Assembly: GCA_024137785.1 (NCBI GenBank)
Contig: JAHRHZ010000085.1
Location: 2,767,494 to 2,831,493 of the forward strand
Length of the DNA: 64,000 nucleotides
Direction of reading: 5' to 3'
Source: Ginglymostoma cirratum
Taxonomy: Eukaryota
Part shown: one piece after another, positions 5,495-53,487 of the stretch
Position numbering within the stretch: position 1 is the first letter of the stretch
Layout of the letters: every line of letters begins with the position of its first letter
Program-made: the position numbers and the translations under genes
The notes under the pieces: generated by a model
The model's database searches: none
What the model was told of the DNA's origin: nothing
What the model saw: the letters and a program-made list of their open reading frames with translations, nothing else

Positions 5495-5546
5495 ATGGGA
5501 GTTTTGAATGTTCTGTGGTCTATCTCAACCCTCGGCATTTACACAG
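5495..5546 (+). CDS. Gene A exon 1: leader peptide of VJ-C1 IgSF receptor
   Basis: ATG at 5495; MGVLNVLWSISTLGIYT-G is hydrophobic and signal-like; phase-1 donor G|GTATAT at 5547. Confidence 0.85.
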
Positions 5547-5729
5547 GTATATGTACTGACAGAGGTCGAATAAATTTTAAGAGGCATTGGAATTGTGTAC
5601 ACATTACTTTGTTCAATACGTGTGTTGCTTTTTTTAACAAAATTTTTTTATCGTTATATTCTTTGACACATTGTTCTCTCACTAACAGTCTTGCGAATCA
5701 TTGTCTGCTCATGTGCTTGTTTCTCACAG

Positions 5730-6050
5730 TCGCTGATGGGAGCTCTCTCCAGATGGGTCAGTCCCCCACCCGTTTGACTGCGGTGAAAGGTACAAATGTG
5801 TCCATGAATTGCACTTACACACTTTTCGATCCCAAAGCAATCCTGGATGTTTCCTGGTCGAGACGAAACCAGAACAGGACATTAGAAGTGACAGCAGACA
5901 ACAGGAAAGTTGTGATATCTTTGAAGCAAGCAGCTACCGAGTTACACCTGTTGGATGTGGATTTTCAGGACAGCGGAGTATATTATTGCAGCGCGAGAGA
6001 CAGGAAACAGAAAATTTCTTCTCGGAATGGGACTGAGGTTATCGTGCACG
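5730..6050 (+). CDS. Gene A exon 2: V-set Ig domain with in-exon J-like G strand (VJ)
   Basis: Acceptor ttctcacag|; Q-S-P start, B-strand Cys (VSMNC), C-strand Trp (VSWSR), L-x-L-x-x-V-x-x-x-DSGVYYC, ends RNGTEVIVH; phase-1 donor G|GTGAGT. Confidence 0.93.
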
Positions 6051-7639
6051 GTGAGTGATGTAAAGGGCTCGGGCAGGATTATGCAGGTGTATTTGGAGAA
6101 TGTTCAACAGACGAGCAGAGAAGTATTGCTTATGTGTTTCGAGCTGTGCTTCTCATTTTCTACGCTTTGCAGCAATCGCTGTCTTTTCGCACAGGCGCAT
6201 TGTTTAAAGCCTGCAGAAATCAGTAAATAAGGCTTTAGGCAATCATTAATATCATTTCAGTGTAAAGAACCGAAAGAACTGCGGGTGTTGGAAATCAGAA
6301 ATAAAAGCAGAAAACTCAGCAGGCCTGGCAGCAACTGTGGAGAGGAATAAGAGTTATTGCTTCGGATCTAGTTCTGTTTCTGTTTACCATTTAACTGTAT
6401 TTCAGTTATCTCTATTGCTGTTCCGACATTGAGTCACTAGTTTAGATAGCGTTCATTGTTAATCCGATTTCTCTTTGAATAAGTGGCAGAGGGAAATATT
6501 CTTGAATTGCCGTTGAGTATCGTTAATGCGTTAAGATCGTACTGTAATGGATAACTGAAAAGTTGTTTCTTCAGCGATAATGAAGATTTTTTTTTAATGT
6601 CCAGTGATAATTCTCAATGCTTTGAGTAACGATATTTGTCTTTAGCTTCGTTCTGTACAGTCACCCCTCAACACGAGACTCAGCTCCTGATCCAAATTCT
6701 CCAGAATGCGGAATCAATTGCTCATATTTAACCAGTCAAGTCTTTTCTGAATATTATATTTTTCAATGAGATCAGCTCTGATCGCTCCAAACTCCAAATA
6801 ACATCGACGAAAAATACACATCCCCTAAATACAGGACAATTCGGTAACAGCAGCGACAAATAATGTTAATCTTCGTTGCTCTTCCTCCAATTCAAATACA
6901 AACTCTCTCAAATATGGAGACCAAACTGCAGATAGCATTCTCAGAGTGGTTTAACCAAAGCACTGTGAAATTGCCCAAAGACTTATTTCTAACTTTGTAG
7001 TTCCTGTCCCCTTGCACTAACAAACGTTCAGTTTTCCTTCTTAATTGCCTGTCCCTCCTGCATTCTGACCTTCCAAGCTTCTTGTAGGATAGCACACAAA
7101 TGCCACTGAGCATCCAAAGAGTTTTGCACATTTCAAAAATATCCTGTTTAACTATTCATTTCCCAAAGTGCACAACATCATACTTTATATTTAACCCGCA
7201 AGCCTCTTCCCCATGTCCCTAGCCTTGCGATGCATCTTACTCACAGCTTTATTTTGTTATTTTGTTTGTTTATTCTTTGGATGTGTTCATCTATGGATAT
7301 GTCAACATTTTTTGCCCACATTTACTTTACTTTCACTGATTAACTCACACAGCAGTTAATGGACCACCTTGTTGCTGACAGGAACGGCTCATATTCTGGC
7401 TAGGTTGGATAAATTAGGCAGAATTCTTCCTGAAGGAAAGCATTTGAGCCAGAGGGGTTTTGACAACAATTGATGATGGTTGGCATTGTCACAGTAATTG
7501 TGATTTGAATTCATTAAATATTGAAAGAATAATCATTGAAGAACTCAATCAAAATTAGTAATAAATTTCCACCAGTGCTAGGATTTGGATCCATATTCAC
7601 AGGACATTAATGTGCGACTCTGGATTACTGAGAAGGATA

Positions 7640-8935
7640 AGTGATACGATCAGATAATACATTATTGCATGGTACAGGGGGAGGTATTCATTCGCACACA
7701 TGGAGGAGTCATTCGGGATAACAAATCAGAGTAAATTGATAATTTGTGGACTAGCGAATTGCAGCTAGTGTCATAGATGAGTGCCGATACTCAAATACTT
7801 CTAAATTGCAATAATATATGACTGGAGAGGTGTGTGAGGGGAAGAGGTTCAGATTCCCAGCACATTGGGAACAAATCTGGGAGAGTTGGGACCTGCAGAC
7901 TTGAGAGTGGGAGTATGAACTGCACAGGTTTAACTGGGCAGGTATTGAACTGATGTCCGAAGGGATGTATTAGTCAGTGCGGTGGGAGCATTTAAACTAA
8001 AATGGCTGGGCCTTAGGAGGTACCCAGGGAGATAGAAGAGATGAAACCAAGGGGGGGGGGAAAACAGAAAAAATGGGGATTAAGAAAGAGATAGGTGCAG
8101 AATTCAAGTGTAATAATCAATCAGGACCACATTGCAAAAATAATGTGAACAGGTCAGATTCTTAAACAGTCAAGCCTTGACGACTTATTTCTTAATGGAC
8201 ATAGATTCACAATAAAGTGGATAAACGAGTAATGCAACTAGATATAAAATGCATACCATATAGGTAGGATTACAAGACTTGGCTCAAATTGATGACGAAT
8301 GGGAATTGAATATCCAGAGTGTTCAGTTTTTAGGAAGACAGATAGATAGGTAAACGAGGTTGTGTAACATTGCTGGTTAAGGAGGGCAGTAATACAATAG
8401 TGAGGCAGGATATTAGCTCACATAAAATAGAATCTGTATGGATAGAACTTAGAAAGACCAAGTGGTATAAAATGAGAGTGGGGTATGTTGAAAGATCACC
8501 AATCTGCTGGCATAATATTAGGGAAAGCATTTAACAGGAAATTAGAAATGCAAGAAATGGAAGGGCTGCCGTAATTAAGGTGGCATTCGTCTGCATATAG
8601 GTTGGGTAAATCAAGTCAATAATAATATCATAGAGGCAAAATTCCTGGAGTGTGTATGGCATGGTTTTCTGGATCAGTGCATTGCAGAACCATTGACAAA
8701 ACAGGCCATCCTTAACTGGGTAATGAAAATGGGATAATTGGTAATTTGGCTGTGCAAGATCCCTTGGGAAAGAGTGACCATGGTTTGACAAAATTGCTCA
8801 TTAAGTTAGACAGTGACATTGTTGCCTCTGAGACTGGAGTTCTGAAATTAAATAAAGGAAAATGTGCAGCATGTGATGGCTGTGATGAATTAGGGAGTGT
8901 TAGTTAAAGAGATGATTGTGTAAAAGTAAAGAGAA
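7640..8935 (+). mobile_element. Degenerate CR1-type LINE fragment (ORF1 end / APE region)
   Basis: Decayed APE-like motifs (e.g. GAATCTGTATGGATAGAACTTAGAAA, CCCTTGGGAAAGAGTGACCAT). Confidence 0.6.
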
Positions 8936-8946
8936 ACATGTCAAAA

Positions 8947-9434
8947 GTGGCTTTAAGAGGTGTGTTTTATCCTGGTTTCTTCCAGATAGAGAGAGAAGTG
9001 TGGGGAACAGGCGACGAGCAGTCTTTGAGAAGATAAACAATTTGTGAAGTCTTTGGTGTCTTTTTTTTTTAGAAAGGCTGGAACCATAGAAGCAGGCTGA
9101 ATGGGTTTGGTCAAGTTCCCACCCACAAAACCAGGGATTTTTAGTTCTTAATTTTCAGCAGAAATTGCTGTTTAATTCTTGAACAAGTGGAAGCTATTTT
9201 TCCCTGTGTCGATTTCAGACTAAAGCCGACAGATCTGAAAACTAAAAACTAAAAATCCCTGGTTCTGTGGGTGGAAACTTGACCAAACTCATTCAGTCTG
9301 CTTCTCTTGTTCCAGATTTTCAAAAAAAAGCACCCAAGGCTTCACAAGTTGTTTATCTTTTCACAGACTGTGGCACCTGTCTCCGACAGTCTCTCTATAA
9401 AAGAACCCAGGAAAAAGCACACTTCTTAAAGCCA
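8947..9434. repeat. Fold-back inverted repeat, arms about 210 bp, spacer about 75 bp
   Basis: GTGGCTTTAAGAGGTGTG...ACCAGGGATTTTTAGTT mirrored by AACTAAAAATCCCTGGT...CACACTTCTTAAAGCCA. Confidence 0.85.
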
Positions 9435-9479
9435 TAGCATTGTCGTAATAGTAACAGGAAACTGGCTTATTGGAGGATG

Positions 9480-9703
9480 GCAACAGAAATTGCTGGAAAA
9501 ACTCAACAGGTCTGGCAGCATCTGGGAGACAAAGCAGAATTAAAGCTTTGGATTCAGTGATCCTTCTGAAGAATGGTCTGAAGAAGTGCCACTGGAGCTG
9601 AAACATTAATTCTGCTTTGTCTCCACATATGTGGCCAGACCGGCTGACATTTGCCAGAAATTTCTGTTTTTGTTTCTGATTTCCAGGGTCTGCAGTTCTT
9701 TGA
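9480..9703. mobile_element. Family-2 palindromic PLE mini-element (further copies near 1876-2050, 2280-2360, 6265-6370, 43800-43900, 45165-45265, 45510-45660, 50105-50230, 51672-51775)
   Basis: Shared AAATTGCTGGAAAA.CTCAGCAGGTCTGGCAGCATCTGTGGAGAG and its reverse complement; matches the end of the 32447-34040 PLE. Confidence 0.8.
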
Positions 9704-10685
9704 TTCATGATTACAGGATAGGTCTGGGTCATACTGTTTTTAGATACCAGCTGTTAAAGAACAGTTGCAAATGAATAAAACAAGTTACCAGCATTGATCT
9801 GCCAGTGCATTGCAACACTGGAGAATTTGGGCATCCCAGAAAGGCAGAGGACAGAATTATTCAGCCTAGGGCTGAGAAGTAAGACTGATACTATTAATCT
9901 GTTCGATGCATTCTATAGACCGCAAACCAGGAGGAACAAAATCAGAAAACAAATTGAAAGCATAAATTATAAAGAACTGCAAGAATTATGAGTTAGTTGT
10001 AAAGAGGCTCTTTAAATTTCCAAGCACAGACCAGTATATTAACAGTGTTAAATGCAAGAGTTGTGGAGAGTTTCAATATCGGTATATTTTCAGACCAATA
10101 AGGAAAGAGTCACTGCTGGATCCAGTGCTGAGAAATAATTTGGTTCAACGGGATATACATCTACAGGGAGATAATTCGGACAAATATCTGTGATATTTGA
10201 AGGTTTACATTGCCTCTGGGAATGTAAAAAACAAATTAAGAGTAAAAGTGAAGTTTCTTTTTAATTCATTTGTGGGATGGTGGGTGTCGCTGGCTGGCCA
10301 GCACTTATTGCCCATCCCTAGTTGCTGTTGAGAAGGTTGGAGTTGGAGAACAGCCAAATGCTACCTAATGGGTCTGAGCAAGATAATTGGCATTGCACAT
10401 GGCCAGGCAAAACTGCAAATGAACAATAAATAGCTTTTAATGAATTAGAATTGGGTTTTATTGTCACATGCACTCAAGGGATACAGGAGTGCAGTGAGAA
10501 GTTTACAATGTCACCATTAATGGTGCCATCTTAGGTATAAGGTACGTTGGTACAAAATCTTAGATAAAGAGTAGAAAAATAAAGTTAAAAGTTCAACATC
10601 ACTGTTCTTGTCAAGAAACAAAGTGAAAAGGTTCAAACCGCAGTTCTTCTCTGGCCATGGGCCTGCACAGGTTTTTACCATGAGC

Positions 10686-10870
10686 ATCATAGGACCAGGA
10701 AAACTTGACGTTTTGGGCCTAAACCCTTCATCAGAAATGATTTCTGATGAAGGGTTTAGGCCCGAAACGTCAAGTTTTCCTGCTCCTATGATGCTGCTTG
10801 ACCTGCTGTGTTCATCCAGCCCCATGCTTGTTATCTCGGATTCTCCAGCATCTGCAGTACCTTTTGTCTC
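10686..10870. mobile_element. Palindromic Penelope-derived mini-element in gene A intron 2
   Basis: TSD TTTTTACCATGAGC at 10672-10685 and 10871-10884; arms meet at ...TCATCAGAAAT-G-ATTTCTGATGA... Confidence 0.88.
10740..10775 (+). ncRNA. Minimal type I hammerhead ribozyme motif
   Basis: ATTT-CTGATGA-A-GGGT(ttag)GCCC-GAAA-C-GTC-AAGT: CUGANGA and GAAA cores, stem II, GUC cleavage triplet, stem I ATTT/AAGT. Confidence 0.8.
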
Positions 10871-11700
10871 TTTTTACCATGAGCGCTCGGTATTTCTCAC
10901 ACGCTTGGTTCAATCTTTCTCCCTGGGCTTGATCTCTCCCCTCCATTGGGCTCGATCTGTCAATCCCTGAGCCTCAAGGCTGCCATCTCGCCATCGACCG
11001 CCTTTCACTGTCTCCTGCGTTAGACTCAATCTCTTGACTTCTCAATTCCTGTGCTCCACGAACATATTTCAGGTCGAGTGAAGTTGCATTCCACAAATAG
11101 GTAAGGAGAAATAAACGCTGGAATGCCTTGGATAAAGGAAAACATAGAGGGTAATTTGAAGCTGAAAGGGTGTGAGGGTCTCCAGATGTCGGTTGGACAA
11201 TGCAATTGAGAATCTGCCTGATGAGAGGAGTCTCAGATATCGGAAGTAAAAGAAAGAAAAATCTGAGAATCAAAGAGAAAATATCAGCATAAGATGGCAG
11301 GTAACAGAGAAAATAATCCCAACAGGTTGTATGGGTACGTGAATTGTAAAATTCGGATAAAATGATGATTGAAATTGCTTCGAGCCTGAAAAGGGAAGAC
11401 AGGCACAGACACTTTTTGAAAGTCTGAGGAGTTAATTGGATACATTGTATCAGCCTTTAATGACAAAGAAGATTCAGTCCAATTTGCAATTCCAGTGCAG
11501 GGAGCTTGGAATATGATTTAGAATTGCAGGAAGAAAGATATCAGAACTCTTGGTTGTATTTAAAATTAATAAATGTCCGAAAACAAATGAGGAGCTGTGT
11601 CACAAGACCTAATTGTGAAACTTTGTAGGTGATCTTCTTTACTTTTCTTGTATAACATGTGAGAAACAATTTTAACAAGTTTCCATTAATTAAATCCCAG

Positions 11701-11976
11701 TGCCACCAACTCCTGTGAAGATTACTCATCAGTCCCATTCCACACTGCTCTGTGCAACAGCTGGATTCTTTCCAAAGGAGGTTAACATCACGTGGTATGA
11801 AAATAATATGGAAATTACAGCTGGGTTCAACACAACTATAAAATGGAACAAGGAAGGGTTATATCAAATTTCCAGTTACCTCAGCCCTGTGCAGAATGCA
11901 GTGATGTATACCTGTGAAGTTTCTCATGTTTCTCTCAATGTGCCAGCCAATGACAGCTACATGTTTCTTGATCAGG
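11701..11976 (+). CDS. Gene A exon 3: C1-set Ig domain
   Basis: Acceptor tcccag|; LLCATAGFFPKEVNITW...GLYQISSYL...YTCEVSHVSL are C1-set hallmarks; phase-1 donor G|GTAAGA. Confidence 0.93.
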
Positions 11977-12897
11977 GTAAGATTCTCACATTGACAATAA
12001 TCATTTGAATAGGATGCGTGCTTGATATAGAGGACTGTCTTGTTTTACTGGCCTGTAGTATGTCATTCTTAATGAACTGAGTTTGAAAGATGCCACTATG
12101 TTCATTGCGGTGCAAAGTACAACTCAGGTGGTGCAGGACAATGTGGCACTTTTAAGCTTCATTTGAGTGTGGTTATTGAACATTTCGTCTGCTCTGAATA
12201 GGGCATATTTCACTCTGATGTGAAGAGGGTTGTTCCCAAGTCCTGTGATGATTTGTAGAGTTTTGTTAGGAATTTTGATGATTGAAAATTGAGTGCTGAT
12301 CTTGAGGTTACAAAATACATGTGTGCATAGAGAATGAGCCATCAGGTAATGCACATGAACCCAAAAAACTGAGAGTTATTTTGTCAGAAAATCTAAACTG
12401 CAGCTTACTGTGGTGAAGTTATAGTCAAAGTAGATCTTAAATAAGCAACATAGCGATAAATTAATCAAGAAGTGCAGGGAGCCACAGGGATCAGTGCTGG
12501 GGCATCTGCTGTTCTTGACCTACATAAATGATTTGGAGGAAAACGTAGCTGGTCTAATTAGTAGGCTTGCAGATAATACAAAGATTGGTGAAGTTACGGA
12601 TAGTGAGGAGGATTGTCAGAGGATACAGCAGGACACACATCAGTTGTAGGCAGAAGCAGAAAAATGGCAGATGGAGTTTAATCTGGCAAAATGTGAGGTG
12701 ATGCATTTTGGAAGGTCGAGTTCATAAGATAAGATGTCAGGGCAGAATTAGACTATTTGGCCCATTGAAGTCTGCTCCGTCATTTGATATGGCTGACATG
12801 CTCCTCACTCCTATCTTCCTGTCTTCTCCCCATAGTCCTTCAACCCATCACTGATTAAGAACCTGTCTCACACCTCATTAAATTTACTCACTGTCCC

Positions 12898-13683
12898 TGT
12901 TAGGTTCGTTTTTGGAGACCCTCACGGACTTGATGCAATAACAAGACACTGACCTGTTTAGAAAAACACAAATCCTTTATTACAAAGCAAGTACAAGCTG
13001 TGGAGGATCACTGTACTCAACCCGGCACAGAGTGCAGAGTCTCGTAAGCGATTATCCCCGAGGAGTGGACAGTCCCCACTTCTTGTACCTTATCGAGTGC
13101 GCAGTACATAAAGCAATTTTACATCTCACAATGGCATGTTACATGAAACAATCACTACATTGGACAATGACATGATAACACAAACAATTACTACATCGAA
13201 AACATAAAGAGAGCAGGATGCAGTATCGATTGTTCGCAAAGTGACTGCTAACAGCAGGAGGCGATTTCAAGTTGCCGAAGTGACAGAATGCAATTTCAAG
13301 CTTCCGAAGTGTCTGGCTTGAACAAAGGTCTGTGTCCTGGCCCCTTCAGCAGAAACAGAAGTTACATTCTTTACAGGATTTCAGAAGCCTTACACCTTTA
13401 CAAACGTTGCCACCTAATCTTATTTGAGACAGCTTCCACGTACCCCTGTGCAGGAAAATAAAGATTTACAAAGTTTATCCCTAATTCTATTCAGGCAGGA
13501 AGGTTAAGGTAGTGTCTTTCCTACTTATGTATAGGAAGATAAGGATTTACAAAGTTTTACACCTAATTCTAGTTGGGCAGGTTGTTTTAAGGCAGTGCCT
13601 GCATACCTCTGTGTAAGCAGATAAAGAGCACTAATTTATAGAGAATATAGAAATCAATGGGATGTTATCACAATAACATCTCA
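12898..13683 (-). mobile_element. Solo LTR inserted in a CR1 copy
   Basis: TG...CA ends; 4-bp TSD TCCC (12894-12897, 13684-13687); CR1 sequence resumes across it; minus-strand AATAAA near 12976; internal direct repeats at about 13460-13520 and 13545-13600. Confidence 0.75.
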
Positions 13684-14264
13684 TCCCAGCATCCACTGCA
13701 CTTTGGGGTAGTGAATTCCACGGATTCACAACCCTTTGGGAGAAGTAGTTTCTCCTCAATTCTATTTTAAATTTGCGACCCCTTATCCTAATACTATGCT
13801 GTCTCATCCGAGAATGCCTCACAAGAGGAAGCATCTGCTCCATGTCCATTTTATCTATACCTTTTATCATTTTGAATACCTCAATTTGATCTCCCCTCAT
13901 TCTTCTAAATTCCAGAGAGTTTCGGTTTAATCTGTTCAATCTCTCTTCATATGACAAATTCCTCATCTCTGGAATCAATCTCATGAACCTCCTTTGAATT
14001 GCCTCCAATGCTACTTCATCTTTCCTCGACTAAGGGGACCAAAACAGTGCACAATACTCCAGATGCAGTCTCACCAATACCTTGCCCAGTTGCAAAAATA
14101 CTTCCTTACTTTTATATTCTATTCCTCGAGCTATAAATGCCAAGATTCCATTCACTTTCCTTATTATCTGCTGTACTTTCATGTTAGTTTTCTGTGACAC
14201 GTAAATGAGCACTCCCGAATCCCTCTGCACCCGAGCACCTCAAAGTCCCTCCCCATTTAGATAA

Positions 14265-14630
14265 TCATAGAATCGTAGAATCATAAGATCATAGAATCCC
14301 TGCAGTGTGGAAACAGGCAATTCAGCCCAACAAGTCCACACTGCCCCTGTGAAGAGGATCCCACCCAGACCCATTCCCCTATCCCTGCATTTCCCATGTC
14401 TAACCTACCTAACCTAAACATCCGTGGGCACTCTGGACAATTTAGCACAGCCAATCCACCTAACCTGCACATCTTTGGATTGTGGGAGGAAACCGGAGCA
14501 CCCTGAGAAACCCACATAAATATAGGGAGAATGTGCAAACTTCACACAGACAGTCACCAAGGCTGAAATTGGACTCGGGTCCCTGGCGCTGTGAGTCTGC
14601 AGTGCTAACCACTGAGCCACTGTGCCACCA
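14265..14630 (-). mobile_element. tRNA-derived SINE (HE1-like); other copies at about 34425-34755 (+) and 51147-51490 (-)
   Basis: GGTGGCACAGTGGCTCAGTGGTTAGCACTG A-box head, GTTTGCACATTCTCCC core, (GATTCTAT)n tail. Confidence 0.8.
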
Positions 14631-15449
14631 AAACAATAATACATTGCCTTCCCATTTTTCTGACCAAAACGCATGACCTCACATTTATCCATGTTAAATG
14701 CCATCTGCCACATTTCGGCCCACTCTCTGAATGCATCTATTTCCATTTGTAAGGTTCTTCTTTCCTCATTGCTATTTCCCGTTCCCCTCTTATTTTTGTG
14801 TCATCTGTAAATTTGGCTATAGAGCCTTCTATCCCTGTGTCCAAGTTGTGAATGGAGATTGTAAATAACTGGAGTCCAAGGACTAACCCTGTGGCAGCCC
14901 ACGAATTACTTATTGCTATCAAGAATAAAACCCATTTATCCCTACTCTCTGTCTTCTGACCATCAGTCAGTCACCCGTCCAAGCTAATAAATTACCCCAA
15001 TCCCAAATAACCCAACCTTGTGAATTAACCTTTTGTGTGGCACCTTATCAAAAGTCTTCCAGAAGTCCAGATATATTAATGTACAGGTTCCCCATTATCC
15101 ACTTTGCTTGTTACATCTTTGAAGAACGCTCGCAAATTAGTCAAAAATGATTTGCCCTTCCTAAAACCATGATGACTCTGTTAGATAACACTTTGACTTT
15201 CCAAATGTCCTGATATTGCTTCCTTGACATTGATTCTAACTTAGCCAACAACAAGGTGTTAAACTAACTGTTCTGTAATTTCCCACATACTGCCTCCCTC
15301 ACATTTTAAATGAGTGCGTTACATTAACATTTTTCCAATCTACTGGAACTATTCCTGTGTCCAGGGAATTTTGGAGTATTGTAACCAATAGATTCACTAT
15401 CTCCACTGCTACTTCCTTTAATACTCTACGATGTAGGCCATCAGGCAGA

Positions 15450-18297
15450 TTAAGAAAAACATTAGTTCTGTAACTAGAGAAGGTATTTCTGAAAAATCGT
15501 CCAATGAAAAATATGGTTTGAAATTGGAAATAAAAAGGGAATGATCACCTTGATGGATTGTACTATAGACCTCCCAATAGTCAGAGGGAAATCGAGGAAC
15601 AAATATGCAGAGATATCTCAGACATATGTAAAAATAATAAGGTTGTAATAGTAGGTGATTTTAATTTTCCAAATAGTGACTGGACCTACCACAGTGATAA
15701 AACTTTGAATGGTGAAGAATTTATTAAATGTTGTCGAGAATTTTTTTTTGATATGTGAATATTCTCACTAGAGAAGGAGCAAAACTAGACCTTCTTTTGG
15801 GTAATAAGACAGTTCAAGTCACAAAGTGACATTTGGGCAACATTTTGTCCAGTGATCATAATTCTATTTGTTTAAAGTAGTCATGTAAAAAGATAAGTCT
15901 TCTATAAAAATAAAAGTTTTCATTTGGTGTATAGCAAATTTTAATGATATGAGAGAAGAACCCTCAAAATTGATTGGAGTAGACTGTTTGCAGACAAAGG
16001 ACAACTGATAAGTGGGAGGCTTTCAAAAATATGATGAGAGTTCAGAGTCATTGTGGTGCTGTCAGAGTGAAAGCTAAAACTGGTGGGATTAAAGAACAAT
16101 GGATGAACAAAGATATTCAAGTTCTAGTCAAGAAAAAAAAATCATTTATTAAGTATAAACAACTGGGTTCAAATGAATGCCTTGAATGGTTCAAAGAGTG
16201 TAGGGGCAATCTTAATAAGGAGATCAGGAAGGTGAAGACAGGATATGAGTTATCCTTGGCAAATAAGATTAGGGATAATCCAAAGAGATTCGACAAGTAC
16301 ATTAGGAGCAAAAGAACAACTGCAGTGATTGTAGGGCCTCTTAAAAATCAAAGAGGTTGTCTTAATGTTTAACTTCAAGAGATGGGAGGAATATTAAATT
16401 AATATTTTGCATTAGTTTTTACTGCAGAGAAAGAAATGGAGCCCAGAGAACTCGGGGAAATAAAGACTGAAGTTTTGAAAACAGTTCACGTGACAGAATA
16501 AGAAGTATTAAAAATAAAAAAGGTAGATAAATCTCCGATTATCCTGGGACTTTGTGGGAAGTTAGGGAAGAAATTGCGGGGGCCTTCACAGAAATATTTG
16601 TATCATCAATGAAGTTGGGTGAGGTGCTGCAAGACTGGGCAGTAGTTAACGTTGAGAGATAATAGATACTGCAGATGCTGGAGAATCTGAGATAACAAGG
16701 TGTGGAGCTGGATGAACACAGGCCAAGCAGCATCATAGGAGCAGGAAAGCTTGACGTTTCGGGCCTAGACCCTTCATCAGAAATCCATTTCTGATGAAGG
16801 GCCTAGGCCCGAAACATCAAGCTTTCGTGCTCCTATGATGCTGCTTGGCCTGCTGTGTTCATCCAGCTCCACACCTTGTAATCTGAGTAGTTAACGTTGA
16901 GTGTTTATTTAAGAAGGGATGGAAGGAGAAGTTTGGGAACTATAGACTTGCGAGTCTAACTTCGGTGCTAAGTTGTTGGAAGTGATTCTGAATTATAGCA
17001 TTTATACAAATCTGGAGAGGCAAGGAATGATTAGGGATAGTCAGCATGGTTTTGTGGAGGAAAAAGTGTGCCACAAACATAATTGAGTTTTTTGAGGAAG
17101 TAATCGAGAAGAAGGTTGAACAAGGGCAGATGGATAGACATTGTTTACTTGGACTTTAGTAAAGCCTTTGACAAGATTCCATATGGTAGACTAATTAGTA
17201 AAGTTTGATCACAGGGATTCAAAGTGAGCTAGATAGAAAATTGCCTTAATAGCAGAAGACAGAGTGTGATGGTGGAGGGCTGATTATTGGACTGGAGGCC
17301 TGTGACCAGTGGTGTTCCACTGGGATCAGTGCTTCTGTTTGTTGTTTATCTAAATTATTTAGATGAGAATACACAAAGCTTGGTGAGTAAGTTGGCGGAT
17401 GACACCAAGATTAGTGGTGTACAGGACAGTGAAGAAGGTTACCTAAGATTACAAAGAGATCTTGATCAGTTGGGTGAATGGACTGATGAGTGGAAAACGG
17501 AAAAAAATTTGTATAAATACTAGGTATTACATTTTAGTAAAACAAACAAAGAGAAGACTGATACAATTAAAAGTAGGGCCTTGCGCAGCGTTGCAGAACA
17601 GAGAGACCTGAGGATTCAGGTACATAATTCTTTGAAGTTTGCGTCACATATAGAAACGATGGTTTCGAAGGCGTTTTGTATGCTTGCCTTTGTTGCTCAG
17701 ACCTTTGAGTATATGAGCTGGGACGTTATATTTACTTTGTACAGGATGTTGGTGAGGCCTCTTCTGTGTCCAGTTCTGGTCTCCCTGTTACACGCAGGAT
17801 ATTATCAAGCTGGAGAGTGTTCAGAAGGGATTTGCCAAGATGTTGCCAAGAATGGAGGGTTTGAGTGATAAGGACAGGCTGGATAGGCTGGCACATTTTT
17901 CACTGGAGCGTAGGAGGTTGAGAGGTGACCTTACGGAGGTTTATAAAATAAAAAGGGGTATAGGTCAGCTGAATAGCAAGTGTACTTGTCCTAGGCTGGG
18001 GTATTTCAAGACTGGGGGTGTAGTTTTAAGGTCGCAGGAGAAAGATTTTAAAAAAACATTATGAACAACTTTTTTTACACTGTGAGCGGTGTGTAGAATG
18101 AACTTTTTGAGGAAGTGCTGGATCTGGGTACAGTTACAATGTTTAGAAGACATTTAGTTAAATACATGAACAGCAAATGTTTGGAGGGGCATCAGCCAAG
18201 TGCATGCAGGTGGGACTATTTTAGTTTGGAATTATGGTCGGCATAGACTGGTTGGACCGAAGGGTTTGTTTCCATTTTGTATGAAGCCATGACTCTT
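15450..18297 (+). mobile_element. CR1-type LINE, degenerate ORF2 (APE + RT + 3' end)
   Basis: YYRPPNS..VGDFNFP, SGVPLGSVL..KLADDTKI, RRRLRGDLTEVYKI. Confidence 0.88.
16657..16885. mobile_element. Palindromic mini-element with a hammerhead motif on each strand, nested in CR1
   Basis: TSD AGTAGTTAACGTTGAG at 16641-16656 and 16886-16901; minus motif about 16750-16784 with GTC site; plus motif about 16787-16821 with ATC site. Confidence 0.88.
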
Positions 18298-18973
18298 TCA
18301 TAATTGGTGTTCAATTTCATATATTTCCATCCTCCCCAATGCCCTGTGTTAAAATGTTTAATGATTTTCATTTTGAATTATTCTGACCGGCCTGTAGTTA
18401 CTGGACAGAAACCTCTGCACATTTTAACCTGAGATATATTATTTGGCAGCAACCTGCAGTGACAAGGAACAAAATTGAACCCCATGTCATTCACACAATG
18501 ACACCCACCAACGATCAGGACCTGTGTGATGCATTCAATGCCGCTCACTAGAATTTCACAGCCTGCGATTAAATTCCATGTAATTTAGTGTCCACAGTGG
18601 GCAAACAGTCTGTCTGATCGATTTAATTTTCTGCACAGAGGTACACGAATGGGGAGCAGAGCCTTACAGATAGAGAAAACCAGCAGGCATATGTGCACTT
18701 TCATGCTTTGAACAAAAAGAAAAAGACAGGGGAGACAATCACACTGTGGCAATTTGAAAGGGTTCAGGGCCCACTATGACAGCATCAGAATTTAATGACC
18801 ACGGATTCAAAATCTATCTAATTGAAATCTACACTCAGTAATGGTTATCACAAATCTCTTATTGATTGCCATAAAATGGATATGATTCACAAATGGCCTT
18901 GAGAGAAGGAAATCAATTATCCTTCTCTGGTCTGGCCGACATGTATTCCAGGCCAACAGCGAGTTGATGACTC

Positions 18974-19050
18974 CGAGATAATAGGAATTGCAGATGCTGG
19001 AGAATCCGAGATAACAAGGTATGGAGCTGGATGAACACAGCAGGCCAAGC
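18974..19050 (-). mobile_element. Single-arm truncated PLE mini-element
   Basis: TSD TGATGACTC at 18965-18973 and 19051-19059. Confidence 0.75.
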
Positions 19051-19417
19051 TGATGACTCTGATCTGTTTCCAAGAGACACTAGAAATATGGAGCAGTTGC
19101 TTAGTGTCCAATGACATCATCAACCCCTGAGCAACTGAAATGAGAAGGAATCTGTATGATTAAAATATGGCAACTAATAGAATTAAATGTTCATATTAGC
19201 GCAAATAGATCACTTTTATGTTCTTAATTCTTTCTCGGACTTTAGTTTATTCACGCTGCGCAATAATGTTGCAAATTGGAAGGAAAGATAGAATTGCCAA
19301 GTATTCCCTGAGAGATGGTTGCTTTAACATGTGTGTGACGTCTTATCTGACATCGGTTTCCCATTGCAATTTCTGCTCTTTAAGTGCTAACATTCGACTT
19401 GTTCTCCCTTTTTCTAG

Positions 19418-19525
19418 CTACCAGTGACAGTATTTTGCAAAAAGTGGCTGGATGTGCTGTAGCAGGATTATTACTTCTCGTGTTGGTAACTGTTGCGATG
19501 TGTTGCAAATTTAATACAACTAAAG
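19418..19525 (+). CDS. Gene A exon 4: transmembrane exon (uncharged)
   Basis: Polypyrimidine tract + tag|; ATSDSILQKVAGCAVAGLLLLVLVTVAMCCKFNTTK; phase 1-1; donor G|GTAAGA. Confidence 0.88.
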
Positions 19526-21167
19526 GTAAGACTTGTCACAAACTATGTTCAGAATTGGTTTTGATTATTTAGTTACAACTCAATGCTGCGGTGTAAGGTA
19601 GATTGATTAGTCACGTCAGGGGCATAGGTTTCCAAGTACAACAGTTTTGAGATCTTCTTCCCTCTGAAATCCAGTACTCCAATGATAGAAGGGGCTAAAA
19701 CCCAATCTACTCCTCATGCTAATTTCTCTATTCTTGAAAATAAAGATGAAACATATTTCATGCTTGATGGAAGACAGTTATCGGAACTCAGTAAATTAAA
19801 ATCAGCTAATTCTGAATTATAAAACAAACTCATTCTCATTCAATAATAGAAGGGAATGCTACTTTGTTAATTGTGATGAGAATGACCACGTTGCTTGATT
19901 ATAGCATAACTTTAGACTGATATGATTCCAAATGGTGTTTATGAATGAAATTGATCATTGATGAAAATGTTGTTCTCCAATAGGCACCGAGATAACTCCA
20001 GTTAATGCCAAAGATAACAGCCAGTTCGAAGAACAGGTTTGTTTCATGATCATGTTTGTTTTTGAGAAATAGAAAGTTGTTACAGTGTGCAACACACATA
20101 CATCATTATTTCCGGAACCGCCGTGACATCGGAGCAACTCCCGCCAAATCCATCTGTTCCTAATGATGCATTTGCCCTAAGTACATGGTTACATTGTGTC
20201 ACTGTAGATTGGATAGTTATTCAAGAGTATGAAGTGGCATATCCTCACTCAAAGTATAACCTAAACTGTTGGACATATTCAGCAGAACAGGCCAAAGCTA
20301 TGAAGAGAAACAGCTAAAGTATCTGGTGTAAGACCTTTGATCATTTTCCATTAATTGTGCTTTCAACATGTGTTGCCCACATGAAATCGTACATGACGTG
20401 CACACAATGCGTGGTTGCTGTCATTATTCAAGTCTAGCAGCAGTCTTTCTGTTACATTGAATTCTAAAAACTGAGCATTTGGTTTGTTCTTCACCACTCC
20501 AATTCTATGTCTTAGACAAGTGAATTGTGAATGCATATTCACGGAAATGGTTATTCTCCATTTGTCTGTATTGACAAATGGTTTGAAAATTGCCTGCATG
20601 ACACGTATGCCTGGAAGCACATGTTTCAGTGTTAGGTGACAAGGTTTTCAGTGCAGATAAATGGCATCTGGGTGACAAATTGCTCAAGTGAAAGCAATTC
20701 TGATGCAATTTTGGTTTACTGCACTGAGACAGGAGCTTGTTCTTATCTTCCAAGATCAGAGTTGATCACGAACAGAATGAGCATTGGTGATTTAACCCTA
20801 CACTTCACTCAAGTGAGCAAACAAACAATTGCAAGGAAGATAAAGTTATTCGCTTCGATTTCTGTTTCCAAACATCCCAGAGCATGCCAGGTAACAATGT
20901 GGAGTAAGAGGTTATTTTGAAAAGTAAGTTATGGAAAGGAAGTAAACGCCTCAAAAGGGATGTAATAAAAGCTGAAAAGTTGGAGAATATGAATGGTCTA
21001 GCAGTATCTGTGGAGAGAGAAACAGAGCTAACTTTCAAATCTGATATGACATTTGCTGAGAAAGGAAAATGACTATAAAATGATGTTGAAGGTTTTGGAG
21101 TAGATTTGTAGCTCAAGTTGAGTAGATTGAGCTTGTTTTTATAAAATGATGTTTTTGCTGTTGACAG

Positions 21168-21217
21168 ACAGCAGAGGAGACAACGGAACAGGTAGTGGTG
21201 GTGCCAAAGGCAAAAGG
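21168..21217 (+). CDS. Gene A exon 5: short cytoplasmic linker exon
   Basis: Acceptor tttttgctgttgacag|; DSRGDNGTGSGGAKGKR; donor AGG|GTAAAG; supplies the phase 1-to-0 change needed to read the ITIM exon in frame. Confidence 0.65.
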
Positions 21218-21940
21218 GTAAAGCAGTGTGAATGGTGATGAAGGAGTGTTGTAACACCTCTAACTGAGATGTGTGAAAAAGGAAAGAAAAGTGAGCCTGC
21301 AGTACTGACAGCAAAGACAACAAAATACAAAAAGGACACTGTGTAGATATTGTGGTTATAATCCTAGTGGACGGCAGAGGTCATGCTCTCATGGCCTCTA
21401 TAAGGACACAAGAGAGTCCACATGACCATAAACTCCATTGGAAAAGTTGTAATGCAAAATTCTAAAGAAAGTCTGCTGATTGTGAGGTGAATTTTTCCTT
21501 ACATGTATTTGTGTGCGTATCCATTTTTTTGAAATGCTGATGCTTATCAACTTCAAGGAAACATTGATTATGCTAAAATATACCATAAGACACATGTTAC
21601 AATGAGATAATTTAGCTCGTTTATAAACTACAGGAGTGGGGGAGAGCGCAACGGTGGTGAAGAAATGTATTTCATAAAGGCACTGTTCTATTGCTGGCAA
21701 AGATGTTCCTTTAAAGATGACAAATTTATCTGAGTTGTAGCTTAAGCCGGCAATATATTTGACTGAAATTCTAGGGGATAAATACAGTAGTACCGTCAAC
21801 AGTAACAGTATAACCGCAAGGTCAATGCTGTTATCCTTTAAGCCTTTTTTATCCTACTATATATTGTTCGCAATTTTTGATGCTGCACTGTACTTTATAA
21901 CTTAAGACTCAAATGGTGTTTCTATAATATTTCTCTTCAG

Positions 21941-22051
21941 AGAATACAACAAGGAGAGATGGGGCTTCTATCTTATGCTGTACTGAACTTCAGAGAATAC
22001 AAGAGAAGTAGAAAGCACAGAAATAAAGAAGACCGAACTTTGTATGCGACG
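21941..22051 (+). CDS. Gene A exon 6: cytoplasmic exon with ITIM (LSYAVL) and most of an ITSM (TLYAT)
   Basis: Acceptor ttctcttcag|; phase-0 reading RIQQGEMGLLSYAVLNFREYKRSRKHRNKEDRTLYAT; donor ACG|GTATAA. Confidence 0.8.
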
Positions 22052-22191
22052 GTATAACTGTAAAACAAAGCAATGTTTTCTAACTAAGACTGCTCTAACA
22101 CAAGTGCCTATTCCCATTGATGTATATTGAATACCTACAAGAATTAATTTGATAAGCAGCTGTTCTTGACATTTCCTTGTTACTTTTACAG

Positions 22192-22284
22192 ATTAAACAA
22201 GGGACGGAAGTAAATCTGACTTACGTGTCTCTGGATATGACTGATTTGTCAAAACAGCAACAAGGAAATAGACTGCAAATGTGA
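22192..22284 (+). CDS. Gene A exon 7: terminal coding exon with second ITIM (LTYVSL)
   Basis: Acceptor tacttttacag|; IKQGTEVNLTYVSLDMTDLSKQQQGNRLQM*; TGA 22282-22284. Summed exons = 1011 nt = 336 aa + stop. Confidence 0.78.
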   Translation: MKQGTEVNLTYVSLDMTDLSKQQQGNRLQM

Positions 22285-22547
22285 AGATAAGCAAGCCAAA
22301 CAGAGAATCCAGGATTGTGGAAGAAAATCATCCCAGTTTTACTGGGTCGAGCCATCTTCTTGAGCAGATATTATGTCTGCCTGATTGAATTGGGCTTATT
22401 AGAAAACACATTATTGTTTATCAGAAAGGCTGTAAAGAATCAAAGATGCAAAGACAGAAATACGTTCACTTCTGGGCCACTGTGCTCCTTGGATAAGCCA
22501 TACCTGTAAAAGGAAGGAATCTATGTATTGATTATCATCAGTTATAA

Positions 22548-40475: not shown

Positions 40476-40605
40476 CAATAATGGAGTAGTAGGGCCGATG
40501 TTTTTGTTGATTTGACCATGCTAGTCACCAGTATTCAAACTGTTGTCACAGTCCCATGACTGCAGATGTTTAATTTTCTGCATGCAATAACATCAGTTTC
40601 TCTTA
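40476..40605 (-). pseudogene. Possible decayed TM exon of gene B
   Basis: ctaactaacag| acceptor and TG|GTAAGT donor at the expected position; VRETDVIACRKLNICSHGTVTTV*ILVTSMVKST is only partly hydrophobic and contains a stop. Confidence 0.33.
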
Positions 40606-41144
40606 CTGTTAGTTAGCTCATTCAGTTTATACCCCAACACACCAGGTCTATCCTTGTCATTATCCCTGTTTACTTCAATTACACTGCCAAAGTAAACCTT
40701 ATGCAACCTCTCAACTGTCAATCGATTTTAATCGCATCAAAATCGAACTAAAACCTTTTTCAATTTGTTCCTCAACAATTCTTAGACCTGCACAGATTCA
40801 TGCGTCATAAGGATTCATGCAAAAATCTCAATGCAGAAAGTCTATGGAAGCTGTGAAATGTGATAAGACTGATGGCTGTAATAGATCCAAATTATCGCTG
40901 TTCTTCACGGTAACTCAGGCCATGAGAATGAAGTCCATTTGTTACGAAATTTATAGTCTGCATTCTACGTCACGACACTAAATTTACACAGTGACATGTT
41001 GTCACGTCCTGAGCCAAAAAAAAAAACAAAAGTTATGAATGGCAAGTGGCGCTTTTCAATATCATGCTTTAAAATAGCCCATGTAGGTCACAAGACGTCA
41101 CACCAAACTAGGAACAGAGAAACAGTTTGAAAAGTTCACATTTC

Positions 41145-41420
41145 TTAACCTGAATCGTGTAACTGACACGAGCTGGGAGCTTGAATGCTGTGTGGAAGAT
41201 CTGACACGTATACACTGAATCTGCTCTCCACATGATCGAGAAAGCTGGAAACTGTAAACAAGCTCCCCTATTTCCACACTTGCGTTGATCTCAGATGTAA
41301 TTAGGATATCATTTTAAAACCAAATTACGTGAATTTCCCCTGGGAAAAATGGAGCCGTTGTGCAGAGGAGAGTGATGGACGGAAAGGACAGATGAGTAAT
41401 CTTCACTGGAATTGGAAGCA
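41145..41420 (-). pseudogene. Gene B C1 exon (pseudogene)
   Basis: Acceptor attcacag|; VLPIPVKITHLSFPSITLLCTTAPFFPGEIHVIWF* (TAA 41314-41316), then frameshifted LFTVSSFL and SVYTCQIFHTAFKLPARVSYTIQ; clearly paralogous to gene A C1. Confidence 0.88.
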
Positions 41421-46612: not shown

Positions 46613-46724
46613 CTGACAGAAACAAAAAAGAAACATGTACATATATAATTGCGGATTGGAAGCAGAAACGTCTATGTAGTTTTTACTCACTTTGTTTTTA
46701 TCTGACAAGTTTTCGTTTGAATAC

Positions 46725-53326: not shown

Positions 53327-53487
53327 TTAAAAGTTTTAAATGTCATTTTATTTTCAACTTTGAAAAAACCAAATTCCTATTCCCTTCATTTAGACTGCGG
53401 CCGTCTCATTTTCTCTGATCCAGTTGCCAAACCACTGATTGGGAGGAGGGTGCAGTATGACAACGCAAACATATTTGTATTAATTAA

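What the first reader, a model, noticed from the sequence alone, without database searches (positions are those of the whole stretch)
5495..22284. Intact non-rearranging VJ-C1 receptor with an inhibitory ITIM-ITSM-ITIM tail
Seen: seven exons with compatible phases give a 336-aa protein: leader, V domain whose J-like G strand (RNGTEVIVH; paralog FNGIGSRLIVH) is in the same exon, one C1 domain, uncharged TM, and LSYAVL / TLYATI / LTYVSL motifs. Established: C1 domains are largely confined to Ig, TCR, MHC, beta-2m, tapasin, SIRP and some B7-family proteins; germline VJ domains occur in SIRP, NKp30 and teleost NITR, and VJ-C1 genes are discussed as relatives of the pre-RAG antigen receptor. Inference: an antigen-receptor-shaped (TCR/IgL-like ectodomain) innate inhibitory receptor of a cartilaginous fish, possibly an uncharacterised family.
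Basis: partly seen in the sequence, partly recalled or inferred. Interest (0 to 1): 0.82.

Follow-up and report, generated by a model that had tools for sequence, protein, structure and literature searches.

The report
Shark SIRP-like V-C1 inhibitory receptor gene
This is a real, transcribed shark gene for a cell-surface receptor with one variable-type and one constant-type antibody-like domain and an inhibitory tail; it belongs to a large family, found in sharks, rays and chimaeras, that automatic annotation already labels "SIRP-alpha-like", so it is a useful but not unprecedented find.

Summary
Seven GT..AG exons (5495-22284, + strand) with compatible phases encode 337 aa: split leader, V domain with its G strand in the same exon, one C1-set domain, an uncharged TM, and LSYAVL / TLYATI / LTYVSL. 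Public RNA contigs confirm four junctions (C1>TM, TM>ex5, ex5>ex6, ex6>ex7), including the 53-nt exon 5 that sets the ITIM frame. The leader>V and V>C1 junctions rest on colinearity with a RefSeq orthologue (72% identity).

It is not an isolated oddity. Dozens of V-C1-TM proteins in sharks, rays and chimaera share every exon. NCBI names them inconsistently, most often [quoted passage not shown] (SIRP-alpha-like). In my limited tree the family's C1 groups with lungfish and turtle SIRP-like C1 domains, away from UrIg2, IgL and MHC. The tail aligns colinearly with a lungfish SIRP-alpha-like tail. Near-identical V domains also occur on Arg-TM, short-tailed forms, so these look like paired receptors.

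Caveats:
- This gene has one C1, where SIRPs have two.
- It has lost the first glycine of the J-like GxG and the family's fourth tyrosine.
- Introns 5 and 6 are also seen unspliced; retaining them would truncate the tail.
- Both in-window paralogues carry premature stops.

I found no paper describing the family. The same scan noted similar clusters elsewhere in this genome. Verdict: new member of a known kind.

The parts
5495..5546 (+). Exon 1: start codon and first part of a split leader (MGVLNVLWSISTLGIYT), phase-1 donor
   Evidence: GT donor and frame. The leader aligns with the leader of orthologue P0169. The junction was not tested by reads.
5730..6050 (+). Exon 2: V-set domain with Cys23, Trp41, DSGVYYC, and the J-like G strand (SRNGTEVIVH) in the same exon
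   Evidence: Pfam V-set 1.4e-12. 70% identical to the P0169 V domain. AG/GT borders, phase 1/1.
11701..11976 (+). Exon 3: single C1-set domain (LLCATAGFFP...W...YTCEVSH)
   Evidence: Pfam C1-set 3.2e-15. Best PDB hit is UrIg2, 8.5e-18 summed over 3 stretches; SIRP-gamma scores 2.5e-11. Its 3' end is seen joined to the TM exon in RNA contigs of runs X1 and X5.
19418..19525 (+). Exon 4: stalk, uncharged transmembrane helix (VAGCAVAGLLLLVLVTVAMCC) and stop-transfer KFNTTK
   Evidence: Joint 19525|19984 in X1, X5 and one X11 poly(A) read; loose end at 19417 equals the C1 exon end.
19984..20036 (+). Exon 5: 53-nt cytoplasmic exon (TEITPVNAKDNSQFEEQ) that shifts phase 1 to phase 0 and so sets the ITIM frame
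   Evidence: Both flanking joints are seen: 19525|19984 and 20036|21941 (X1, X3, X5). Skipping this exon gives a 23-aa motif-less tail.
21941..22051 (+). Exon 6: ITIM LSYAVL (21968-21985) and the first five residues of ITSM TLYAT(I) (22037-22051)
   Evidence: Frame and motifs. 79% identical to P0169. Joint 22051|22192 is seen only in X5; the unspliced form is seen in X1 and X5.
22192..22284 (+). Exon 7: completes TLYATI, carries ITIM LTYVSL (22216-22233), stop TGA at 22282-22284
22285..22506 (+). 3' UTR as far as RNA contigs reach; AATAAA lies further on at 22548
   Evidence: X1 contig runs to 22506. X5 contig ends at 22500 in adapter sequence. Depth is 0 beyond 22516. PAS scan.
39578..46646 (-). 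Paralogue 2 (V 46646-46293, C1 41421-41111, TM 39706-39578): pseudogene
   Evidence: Stop at the Trp41 position of V, and a stop plus a frameshift in C1. It carries the better J-like motif FNGIGSRLIVH.
52464..62349 (+). Paralogue 3 (V 52464-52778, C1 53902-54219, TM 62221-62349): divergent copy with one premature stop
   Evidence: Stop codon immediately before Cys23 of V. The C1 is open, Pfam C1-set 5.1e-9. No J-like motif. Any tail exons would lie at or beyond the window end.

Best explanation
Gene 1 encodes a type I membrane receptor of a multigene family found across cartilaginous fish. The family's nearest characterised relatives are the signal-regulatory proteins (SIRPs).

Shown here:
- The gene is transcribed and spliced so that a V domain with a germline-joined J-like G strand, one C1 domain, an uncharged TM helix and a tail with ITIM (LSYAVL), ITSM (TLYATI) and ITIM (LTYVSL) form one protein.
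- The same exon-by-exon architecture is conserved in sharks, rays and chimaera.
- The C1 domain groups with SIRP-like C1 domains.
- The tail is colinear with a lungfish SIRP-alpha-like tail.

Inferred:
- The V domain binds a still unknown ligand on another cell or on a microbe.
- Ligand engagement lets Src-family kinases phosphorylate the tail tyrosines.
- The LSYAVL-to-TLYATI pair, with tyrosines 23 residues apart, docks the tandem SH2 domains of SHP-1/SHP-2. That spacing recalls the roughly 24-residue spacing I remember for SIRP-alpha's first pair.
- The recruited phosphatases dampen activating signals in the expressing cell.
- Family members with nearly the same V domain but an Arg-containing TM and a short tail would be the activating partners. 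This is a paired-receptor system of the SIRP-alpha/SIRP-beta type, evolving by birth and death.
For: Gene and splicing:
- Exon borders, phases and 337-aa frame.
- V-set and C1-set calls.
- Four splice junctions in RNA contigs or reads from several studies, including both sides of exon 5.
- 72% gap-free colinearity with RefSeq P0169, Hemiscyllium 'tyrosine-protein phosphatase non-receptor type substrate 1-like'.
- Every exon aligns to family members from Heterodontus, Heptranchias, Mobula, Narcine and Callorhinchus.

Family range:
- All 51 hits of a family profile at E<=1e-5 are chondrichthyan.

SIRP affinity:
- C1 tree: family clade 93/92, and the branch joining it to lungfish and turtle SIRP-like C1 domains against UrIg2, IgL and MHC has 97/89 support. 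P0005 was verified as UrIg2 by 9dmx at 1.3e-142.
- Best single-domain non-family C1 matches include lungfish SIRP-like proteins, at about 1e-13 to 1e-12.
- Tails align colinearly with the lungfish SIRP-alpha-like tail ITYATL/TEYAEV/VTYADV/TEYATV, z 3.3-7.2 against shuffles.
- The family profile aligns colinearly with SIRP-alpha d1-d2 (3.6e-26).
- Protein-atlas nearest clusters are SIRP-alpha-like, score 0.96.

Fold and pairing:
- AF2 model of the orthologue has confident V and C1 folds and a TM helix.
- Arg-TM short-tail forms carry near-identical V domains: P0158/P0181, P0170/P0187, P0173/P0191.
Against: - There is only one C1 domain, where SIRPs have two.
- The V-domain tree is an unresolved polytomy, and the V exon alone does not pick SIRP V among its 60 best PDB hits; TCR-alpha V at 1e-5 is the best true V.
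- The best PDB hit of the C1 exon is UrIg2, though that score is summed over three domains.
- The reference set for my trees lacked mammalian SIRPs, TCR, tapasin, B7 and PRARP sequences.
- Tail similarity rests on short tyrosine motifs that can converge.
- This gene has lost the first Gly of the GxG bulge and the family's fourth tyrosine motif.
- Introns 5 and 6 are also present unspliced in RNA contigs. For intron 6, the unspliced contig has depth 132 against 76 for the spliced joint in X5, and only the unspliced form is seen in X1. Retention would give a tail ending at TLYATV* (intron 6) or a motif-less tail (intron 5).
- No ligand, phosphorylation or SHP binding is shown.
Confidence: 0.7

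Rival explanations
1. [quoted passage not shown] 2019, J Immunol). As I recall that paper, these are non-rearranging VJ(-C1)-TM proteins with a potential ITIM in bony fish, amphibians, reptiles and birds. On this reading it is not a SIRP relative.
For: The architecture is the same as I remember from the PRARP paper. That paper is only cited, not held, in the library. PRARP is listed among VJ genes relevant to antigen-receptor origins in PMC10751288.
Against: I had no PRARP sequence, so nothing could be tested. The C1 tree and the tail comparison point to SIRP-like proteins. PMC10751288 names PRARP among VJ genes in the MHC, whereas this scan's MHC notes lie on other assembly pieces than this cluster. 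That is weak evidence, because few windows have been scanned.
Confidence: 0.12
2. It is a relic of the pre-RAG antigen-receptor lineage. It would be a membrane-bound, single-C1 relative of UrIg/UrIg2, closer to Ig/TCR than to innate paired receptors.
For: The best PDB hit of the C1 exon is UrIg2, at 8.5e-18. The family profile hits UrIg2 V-C1 at 3.9e-30. Foldseek ranks Ig light chains first, with V-C1 colinear at about 5e-16. V-C1-TM is the chain plan of TCR.
Against: In the C1 tree, UrIg2 domains (identity verified), IgL and MHC sit across a 97/89 branch from the family plus SIRP-like domains. UrIg2 V is separated from the family V domains at 88/73. The PDB scores for UrIg2 are sums over several domains. 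Fab light chains dominate the PDB by number. UrIg and UrIg2 have three and nine C domains (PMC12227049).
Confidence: 0.07
3. It is a B7/butyrophilin-type ligand (V plus C1-like), as some automatic names of family members suggest (NCR3LG1-like, CD276 homolog, PD-L1-like).
For: By representative-based structure search, the best two-domain matches are B7-H6 (Z 16.6), B7-H3 and butyrophilins. Several RefSeq names follow this line.
Against: Z values are nearly tied over many V-C pairs, with SIRP-gamma at 13.6, so the structure search does not discriminate. The family has a J-like NGxGTxLIVH strand. It has a SIRP-alpha-type four-tyrosine tail and Arg-TM partners. From my own knowledge these are not B7 traits. 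Pfam prefers C1-set to the butyrophilin C domain by 11 orders of magnitude.
Confidence: 0.04
4. The gene is on its way to becoming a pseudogene, like its two neighbours. It is transcribed, but the fully spliced inhibitory protein would be a minor or non-functional product.
For: Both in-window paralogues carry stops. The J-like bulge is degenerate and the tail is shortened compared with the family. Introns 5 and 6 are also present unspliced in RNA contigs, and X1 shows only the unspliced form of intron 6. The C. plagiosum RefSeq model P0002 also ends in intron-5 read-through.
Against: The 337-codon frame is open across seven exons. All canonical Ig residues are intact. The Hemiscyllium orthologue keeps the same three motifs. 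Contig depths are a poor measure of isoform ratio (tool note).
Confidence: 0.07

Closest known systems
Signal-regulatory proteins (SIRP-alpha/SHPS-1, SIRP-beta, SIRP-gamma)
   Same: - N-terminal V domain with a germline J-like (S/N)GxGTxLxV strand.
- C1-set constant domain.
- In the family, a tail with four alternating tyrosine motifs ([LI]xYAxL ... TxYAx[IV] ... LTYAxL ... xEYAx[IV]), colinear with a lungfish SIRP-alpha-like tail.
- Inhibitory forms paired with charged-TM, short-tailed forms.
- C1 groups with SIRP-like C1 domains.
- NCBI's most frequent automatic name for the family.
   Different: - One C1 domain instead of two.
- This gene keeps only three of the four tyrosine motifs and has lost the first Gly of GxG.
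- V-domain affinity to SIRP V is unresolved.
- It is a large lineage-specific expansion in Chondrichthyes, not a one-to-one orthologue.
- CD47 binding and synteny were not tested.
UrIg and UrIg2 (non-rearranging elasmobranch VJ-C1 genes; Flajnik et al. 2023, 2025)
   Same: Elasmobranch, non-rearranging, with the VJ-type domain in one exon behind a split leader, followed by C1-set domains. UrIg2 is the best PDB sequence hit of the C1 exon. UrIg2 also has a TM form.
   Different: UrIg has three and UrIg2 nine or more C domains. UrIg is secreted. PMC12227049 mentions no ITIM. UrIg2 C and V domains fall on the other side of supported branches from this family.
PRARP genes of bony vertebrates (Fu et al. 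2019; recalled from memory, paper not held)
   Same: Non-rearranging VJ domain, C1 domain in non-avian species, TM, and a potential ITIM in the tail. This is the same overall plan.
   Different: PRARP was described as a pair of linked genes, not a large cluster, and PMC10751288 names it among VJ genes in the MHC.
Teleost NITR, skate MDIR, mammalian KIR/LILR-type paired receptors
   Same: Germline-encoded IgSF multigene families with ITIM-bearing and charged-TM members, evolving by birth and death with many pseudogenes.
   Different: Those families lack a C1-set domain. NITRs have V plus I-type domains, and MDIR are CD300/TREM-like V-only receptors. This statement rests on general knowledge and was not tested here.

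Membership tests
SIRP family | N-terminal V-set domain with germline-joined J-like G strand | tested here: met
   Pfam V-set 1.4e-12. V and the G strand lie in one exon. The family motif NGxGTxLIVH parallels lungfish NGSGTHLYV and turtle SGAGTAVTV. In this gene the motif is degenerate (SRNGTEVIVH).
SIRP family | Two membrane-proximal C1-set domains (V-C1-C1) | tested here: not met
   There is only one C1 exon between V and TM. The orthologue P0169 and nearly all family members have one C1.
SIRP family | C1 domain groups with SIRP C1 domains in phylogeny | tested here: met
   The family clade (93/92) joins lungfish and turtle SIRP-like C1 domains. The branch against UrIg2, IgL and MHC has 97/89 support. 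Sampling was limited: no mammalian SIRP, TCR, tapasin or B7 sequences.
SIRP family | SIRP-alpha-type tail: four tyrosines in two ITIM-type pairs | tested here: inconclusive
   The family consensus has four motifs and aligns colinearly with the lungfish SIRP-alpha-like tail, z 3.3-7.2. This gene and its Hemiscyllium orthologue keep three.
SIRP family | Binds CD47; tail recruits SHP-1/SHP-2 | not testable with these tools
   Needs binding and pull-down experiments.
SIRP family | Conserved synteny with the tetrapod SIRP locus | not tested
   The window holds only three family copies and transposable elements. No flanking marker genes are present.
UrIg/UrIg2 | VJ exon followed by three or more C1 domains | tested here: not met
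   One C1 exon only. UrIg has 3 and UrIg2 9-11 C domains (PMC12227049).
UrIg/UrIg2 | V and C domains cluster with UrIg/UrIg2 | tested here: not met
   UrIg2 (P0005, verified) and UrIg2-like domains are separated from the family by 97/89 for C1 and 88/73 for V.
Rearranging antigen receptors (Ig/TCR) | V and J as separate gene segments | tested here: not met
   The FR3 motif DSGVYYC, the CDR3-like stretch and the G strand are contiguous within exon 2 (5730-6050), which splices directly to C1.
PRARP | Sequence orthology to chicken, frog or fish PRARP | not testable with these tools
   No PRARP sequence or paper was available. Only the architecture, recalled from memory, matches.
ITIM-bearing inhibitory receptors (functional class) | Uncharged TM and at least one cytoplasmic (I/V/L/S)xYxx(I/V/L) motif, conserved in relatives | tested here: met
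   LSYAVL, TLYATI (ITSM, TxYxx[VI]) and LTYVSL. The motif columns are conserved in sharks, rays and chimaera. The TM has no charged residue.

The most novel reading that the evidence does not exclude
The chondrichthyan V(J)-C1-TM family, with ITIM-tailed members and Arg-TM members, may be a direct descendant of the ancestral single-C1, membrane-bound VJ-C1 receptor. SIRPs would then have arisen from it by C1 duplication, and PRARPs may have arisen from it as well. That would make it a TCR-chain-shaped innate paired-receptor system as informative for antigen-receptor origins as UrIg/UrIg2, and so far undescribed in the literature.
Probability: 0.2. Interest if true: 0.75.

Novelty: new member of a known kind. 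Interest (0 to 1): 0.5.

Why it matters
VJ-C1 genes that do not rearrange are the comparative evidence for what the RAG transposon invaded. This locus shows that cartilaginous fish carry more than UrIg and UrIg2. They also have a large, clustered, actively turning-over family of membrane V(J)-C1 receptors with SIRP-alpha-type inhibitory tails and Arg-TM partners.

If the SIRP affinity holds, the SIRP lineage would date back to the base of jawed vertebrates, in a two-domain form shaped like a light chain or a TCR chain. That gives a tractable set of genes for testing ligand recognition and SHP signalling in an early-branching vertebrate. For annotation, it argues for one family name in place of the seven or more unrelated automatic names now in RefSeq.

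Tried and rejected
- Word-index protein search with the V exon, using the stop-free frame 5348-6055 and region 129-236, found nothing.
- Literature: the 'PRARP' search returned only unrelated acronyms. The PRARP title phrases occur only in a reference list. The 2023 UrIg paper is not held. Three searches for SIRP-like or non-rearranging ITIM families in sharks found no description.
- The last protein search, with lungfish SIRP-alpha-like P0090, returned lungfish, one turtle and two frog proteins but no mammalian SIRP, so no curated SIRP could go into the trees.
- Structure search does not discriminate. Foldseek is swamped by Fab light chains. The representative search gives near-tied Z for B7, nectin, Neph, butyrophilin and SIRP pairs.
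- The V-domain tree has an unresolved backbone.
- Synteny: long ORFs elsewhere in the window gave only a weak GIY-YIG hit, pointing to a Penelope-like element, and no marker genes.
- Rejected: TM exon spliced straight to 21941. It gives a motif-less tail and was not seen in reads.
- Rejected: an artefact of chance ORFs. Every exon is conserved in other species.
- Left out by instruction: the joined 337-aa model was never sent to a database, fold or family tool. Those searches were made exon by exon by reference, and the fold was made on the orthologue P0169. The joined frame was built only inside scripts from window.fa, to check phases and to compare with proteins already fetched.

Full report
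**1. What is in the sequence**

On the + strand, seven segments with AG/GT borders join in compatible phases. They are 5495-5546, 5730-6050, 11701-11976, 19418-19525, 19984-20036, 21941-22051 and 22192-22284.

- Exon 1 is the first half of a split leader.
- Exon 2 is a V-set domain (Pfam 1.4e-12). It has Cys23, Trp41, DSGVYYC and its G strand (SRNGTEVIVH) in the same exon, so nothing needs to rearrange.
- Exon 3 is a C1-set domain (3.2e-15, against 5.7e-4 for C2-set).
- Exon 4 carries an uncharged TM helix.
- Exons 5-7 encode an 85-aa tail with LSYAVL (aa 280), TLYATI (aa 303, across the exon 6/7 junction) and LTYVSL (aa 316).

**2. Is it spliced that way?**

One reads call was allowed, of at most 6 kb. 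Contigs of three studies (X1, X3, X5) and raw poly(A) reads (X11) were laid.

- Joint 19525|19984: X1, X5 and one X11 read.
- Joint 20036|21941: X1, X3 and X5.
- Joint 22051|22192: X5 only.
- All three joints are GT..AG.
- Loose ends at 19417 in X1 and X5 read ...GCCAATGACAGCTACATGTTTCTTGATCAG, which is the 3' end of the C1 exon.

So C1>TM>ex5>ex6>ex7 is observed.

Intron 4 has no depth in X1 or X3 and only a low-depth, mismatch-bearing contig in X5, so these runs hold cDNA rather than genomic DNA. However:

- Intron 5 is present as one unspliced contig (20007-21967; depth 50 against 101 for the joint in X5).
- The 140-nt intron 6 is present unspliced in X1, which shows no spliced joint there, and in X5 (depth 132 against 76).
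- Retaining intron 6 would end the protein at TLYATV* (sequence), keeping the ITIM and the ITSM.
- Retaining intron 5 gives ...FEEQVCFMIMFVFEK*, with no motif.
- The RefSeq model P0002 of Chiloscyllium plagiosum ends in the same read-through.
- Contig depths are poor measures of abundance, so isoform ratios stay open.

Coverage ends near 22500-22506, and an AATAAA lies at 22548.

The leader>V and V>C1 junctions were not tested with reads. They rest on two things:
- a gap-free 72% alignment of the model (aa 6-328) to RefSeq protein P0169;
- the invariant ...LIVH|VPPTP... junction in all relatives.

**3. Relatives**

The C1 exon was searched by HMMER against 1.84 billion representatives and gave 871 hits. 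The single-C1 hits at 45-80% identity are V-C1-TM-tail proteins of 260-400 aa. They come from Hemiscyllium, Chiloscyllium, Heterodontus, Heptranchias, Scyliorhinus, Carcharodon, Cetorhinus, Mobula, Narcine, Hypanus, Amblyraja and Callorhinchus.

A profile of nine of them found 51 proteins at E<=1e-5, all chondrichthyan. Candidate selection in that tool is by shared words, so distant kin may be missed.

Their automatic names disagree. The most frequent is 'tyrosine-protein phosphatase non-receptor type substrate 1-like' (SIRP-alpha). Others are tapasin-related-like, NCR3LG1-like, CD276 homolog, Ig lambda-like, H-2 class I-like and PD-L1-like.

Each exon of the window gene aligns to them: V 55%, C1 59%, exon 5 53%, exon 6 46% and exon 7 50% identity to P0010. 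The closest protein is P0169 of Hemiscyllium ocellatum.

In the trees, the window's V and C1 are each sister to P0169, with support 100/98 and 100/97.

**4. Which known family is nearest?**

Evidence pointing to SIRPs:
- C1 exon against the PDB: UrIg2 scores 8.5e-18, but that is summed over three domains. SIRP-gamma and SIRP-alpha score 2.5e-11 and 4e-11. Ig and MHC domains also appear.
- The family profile aligns colinearly with UrIg2 V-C1 (3.9e-30), SIRP-alpha d1-d2 (3.6e-26) and Ig chains.
- I built a maximum-likelihood tree of 52 C1 domains. The family (93/92) sits next to lungfish and turtle SIRP-like domains. The branch separating both from UrIg2 (P0005, verified by 9dmx at 1.3e-142), UrIg2-like P0001, a salmonid IgL and a sturgeon MHC class I has 97/89 support.
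- Family tails align colinearly with the tail of lungfish SIRP-alpha-like P0090 (ITYATL...TEYAEV...VTYADV...TEYATV), at z 3.3-7.2 against shuffles.
- The family consensus has four tyrosine motifs. This gene and P0169 keep three.
- The protein atlas also points to SIRP-alpha clusters, score 0.96.

Evidence that is neutral or against:
- The V tree is unresolved. SIRP V, family V and a frog multi-C1 V clade leave one open node, and only UrIg2 V stands apart, at 88/73.
- The V exon alone prefers TCR-alpha V in the PDB, at 1e-5.
- The AF2 model of P0169 has confident V, C1 and TM parts. Its structural neighbours are Fab light chains or nearly tied B7, nectin, butyrophilin and SIRP pairs. That confirms the fold but not the family.

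**5. Paired forms and turnover**

Several relatives have a different TM, with an Arg near its start and ...VDH at its end, followed by a short tail. Examples are P0181, P0042, P0191, P0196 and P0187. Their V domains are almost identical to those of ITIM-tailed members: P0158/P0181, P0170/P0187 and P0173/P0191. This is the signature of paired inhibitory and activating receptors.

In the window, two further copies are broken.
- Copy 2 (- strand) has a stop at Trp41, and a stop plus a frameshift in C1.
- Copy 3 (+ strand) has a stop just before Cys23.

The Hemiscyllium model P0159 fuses the counterparts of copies 3 and 2. Earlier first-stage notes of this scan report similar V-C1 clusters 0.25-0.74 Mb upstream and 6.8 Mb downstream on the same piece, and on other pieces. 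I did not check those.

**6. Mechanism**

Shown: a transcribed, spliced V(J)-C1-TM protein with conserved ITIM, ITSM and ITIM motifs.

Inferred from the established biology of SIRP-alpha, PD-1 and other ITIM/ITSM receptors:
- the V domain engages a ligand;
- Src-family kinases phosphorylate Y282, Y305 and Y318;
- the Y282/Y305 pair, 23 residues apart, binds the tandem SH2 domains of SHP-1/SHP-2;
- this inhibits the cell;
- the Arg-TM partners signal through ITAM adaptors.

**7. Novelty**

UrIg and UrIg2 are the published non-rearranging VJ-C1 genes of elasmobranchs (PMC12227049). That paper mentions neither ITIM nor SIRP. I found no paper on this family.

The architecture itself is known. SIRPs have it, and PRARP has it as I recall from a paper that is not held. 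Gene models already exist in RefSeq. I therefore rate it a new member of a known kind, in a family that deserves a description and a single name.

- No N run was filled; 31643-31652 was left as it is.
- The joined protein was not sent to any search, family or fold tool. It was used only inside scripts.

Noticed in passing
window 20007-21967 and 22052-22191: Introns 5 and 6 of the gene are present unspliced in RNA contigs. Intron 6 is seen in X1 and X5, and X1 shows no spliced joint there. Intron 4 is cleanly absent in X1 and X3. Retention would give tail-shortened isoforms: TLYATV* for intron 6, or ...EEQVCFMIMFVFEK* for intron 5. The same intron-5 read-through ends the C. plagiosum RefSeq model P0002.
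   Followed up: partly
window 20908-21175: A short stretch inside intron 5 has very high depth in all four runs, with many different loose ends on both sides and reads on both strands. It looks like an abundantly transcribed dispersed repeat rather than part of this gene.
   Followed up: no
window 19983 (loose end in run X1): One X1 contig joins a paralogous V-exon end (...GGAATGGGTCTGAGCTTATTGTGCAC, i.e. ...NGSELIVH) directly to exon-5-like sequence. It differs from this gene's V end at 5 of 30 bases. It is either a V>tail isoform of another family member that skips C1 and TM, or an assembly chimera.
   Followed up: no
window 39578-46646 (-) and 52464-62349 (+): Two further family copies lie head to head, and both carry premature stops. 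The Hemiscyllium RefSeq model P0159 ('CDON-like', 546 aa) is a fusion of their two counterparts, although in this window the two copies lie on opposite strands.
   Followed up: partly
window 26000-34000: A GC-rich block (up to 57% GC) holds long ORFs on both strands, a weak GIY-YIG endonuclease hit (0.0019) and a 10-base N run at 31643-31652. It is probably a Penelope-like retroelement. Introns 2 and 3 of the gene (about 12.4-18.1 kb) hold reverse-transcriptase-like ORF fragments.
   Followed up: partly
protein P0127 (Mustelus asterias, 'immunoglobulin kappa light chain-like', 394 aa): This protein has a V with CGCGTTLKV, two C1 domains, a TM and a short tail. Its V groups with UrIg2 V (99/90), and its C domains group with UrIg2 C domains. 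It may be a short membrane-bound UrIg-family member.
   Followed up: no
proteins P0008, P0055, P0124, P0130, P0139 (frogs) and P0003 (Erpetoichthys): Uncharacterised proteins of 800-2100 aa with many C1-set domains, most of them opening with an N-terminal V-type domain, occur in several frogs and a bichir. They are among the best C1 matches. They recall UrIg2 in plan, although PMC12227049 says these non-rearranging genes are retained only in elasmobranchs.
   Followed up: no
proteins P0178, P0165, P0185: RefSeq isoforms of family members skip the TM exon and join C1 directly to the cytoplasmic exons. This predicts secreted proteins that still carry the tyrosine-motif tail.
   Followed up: no
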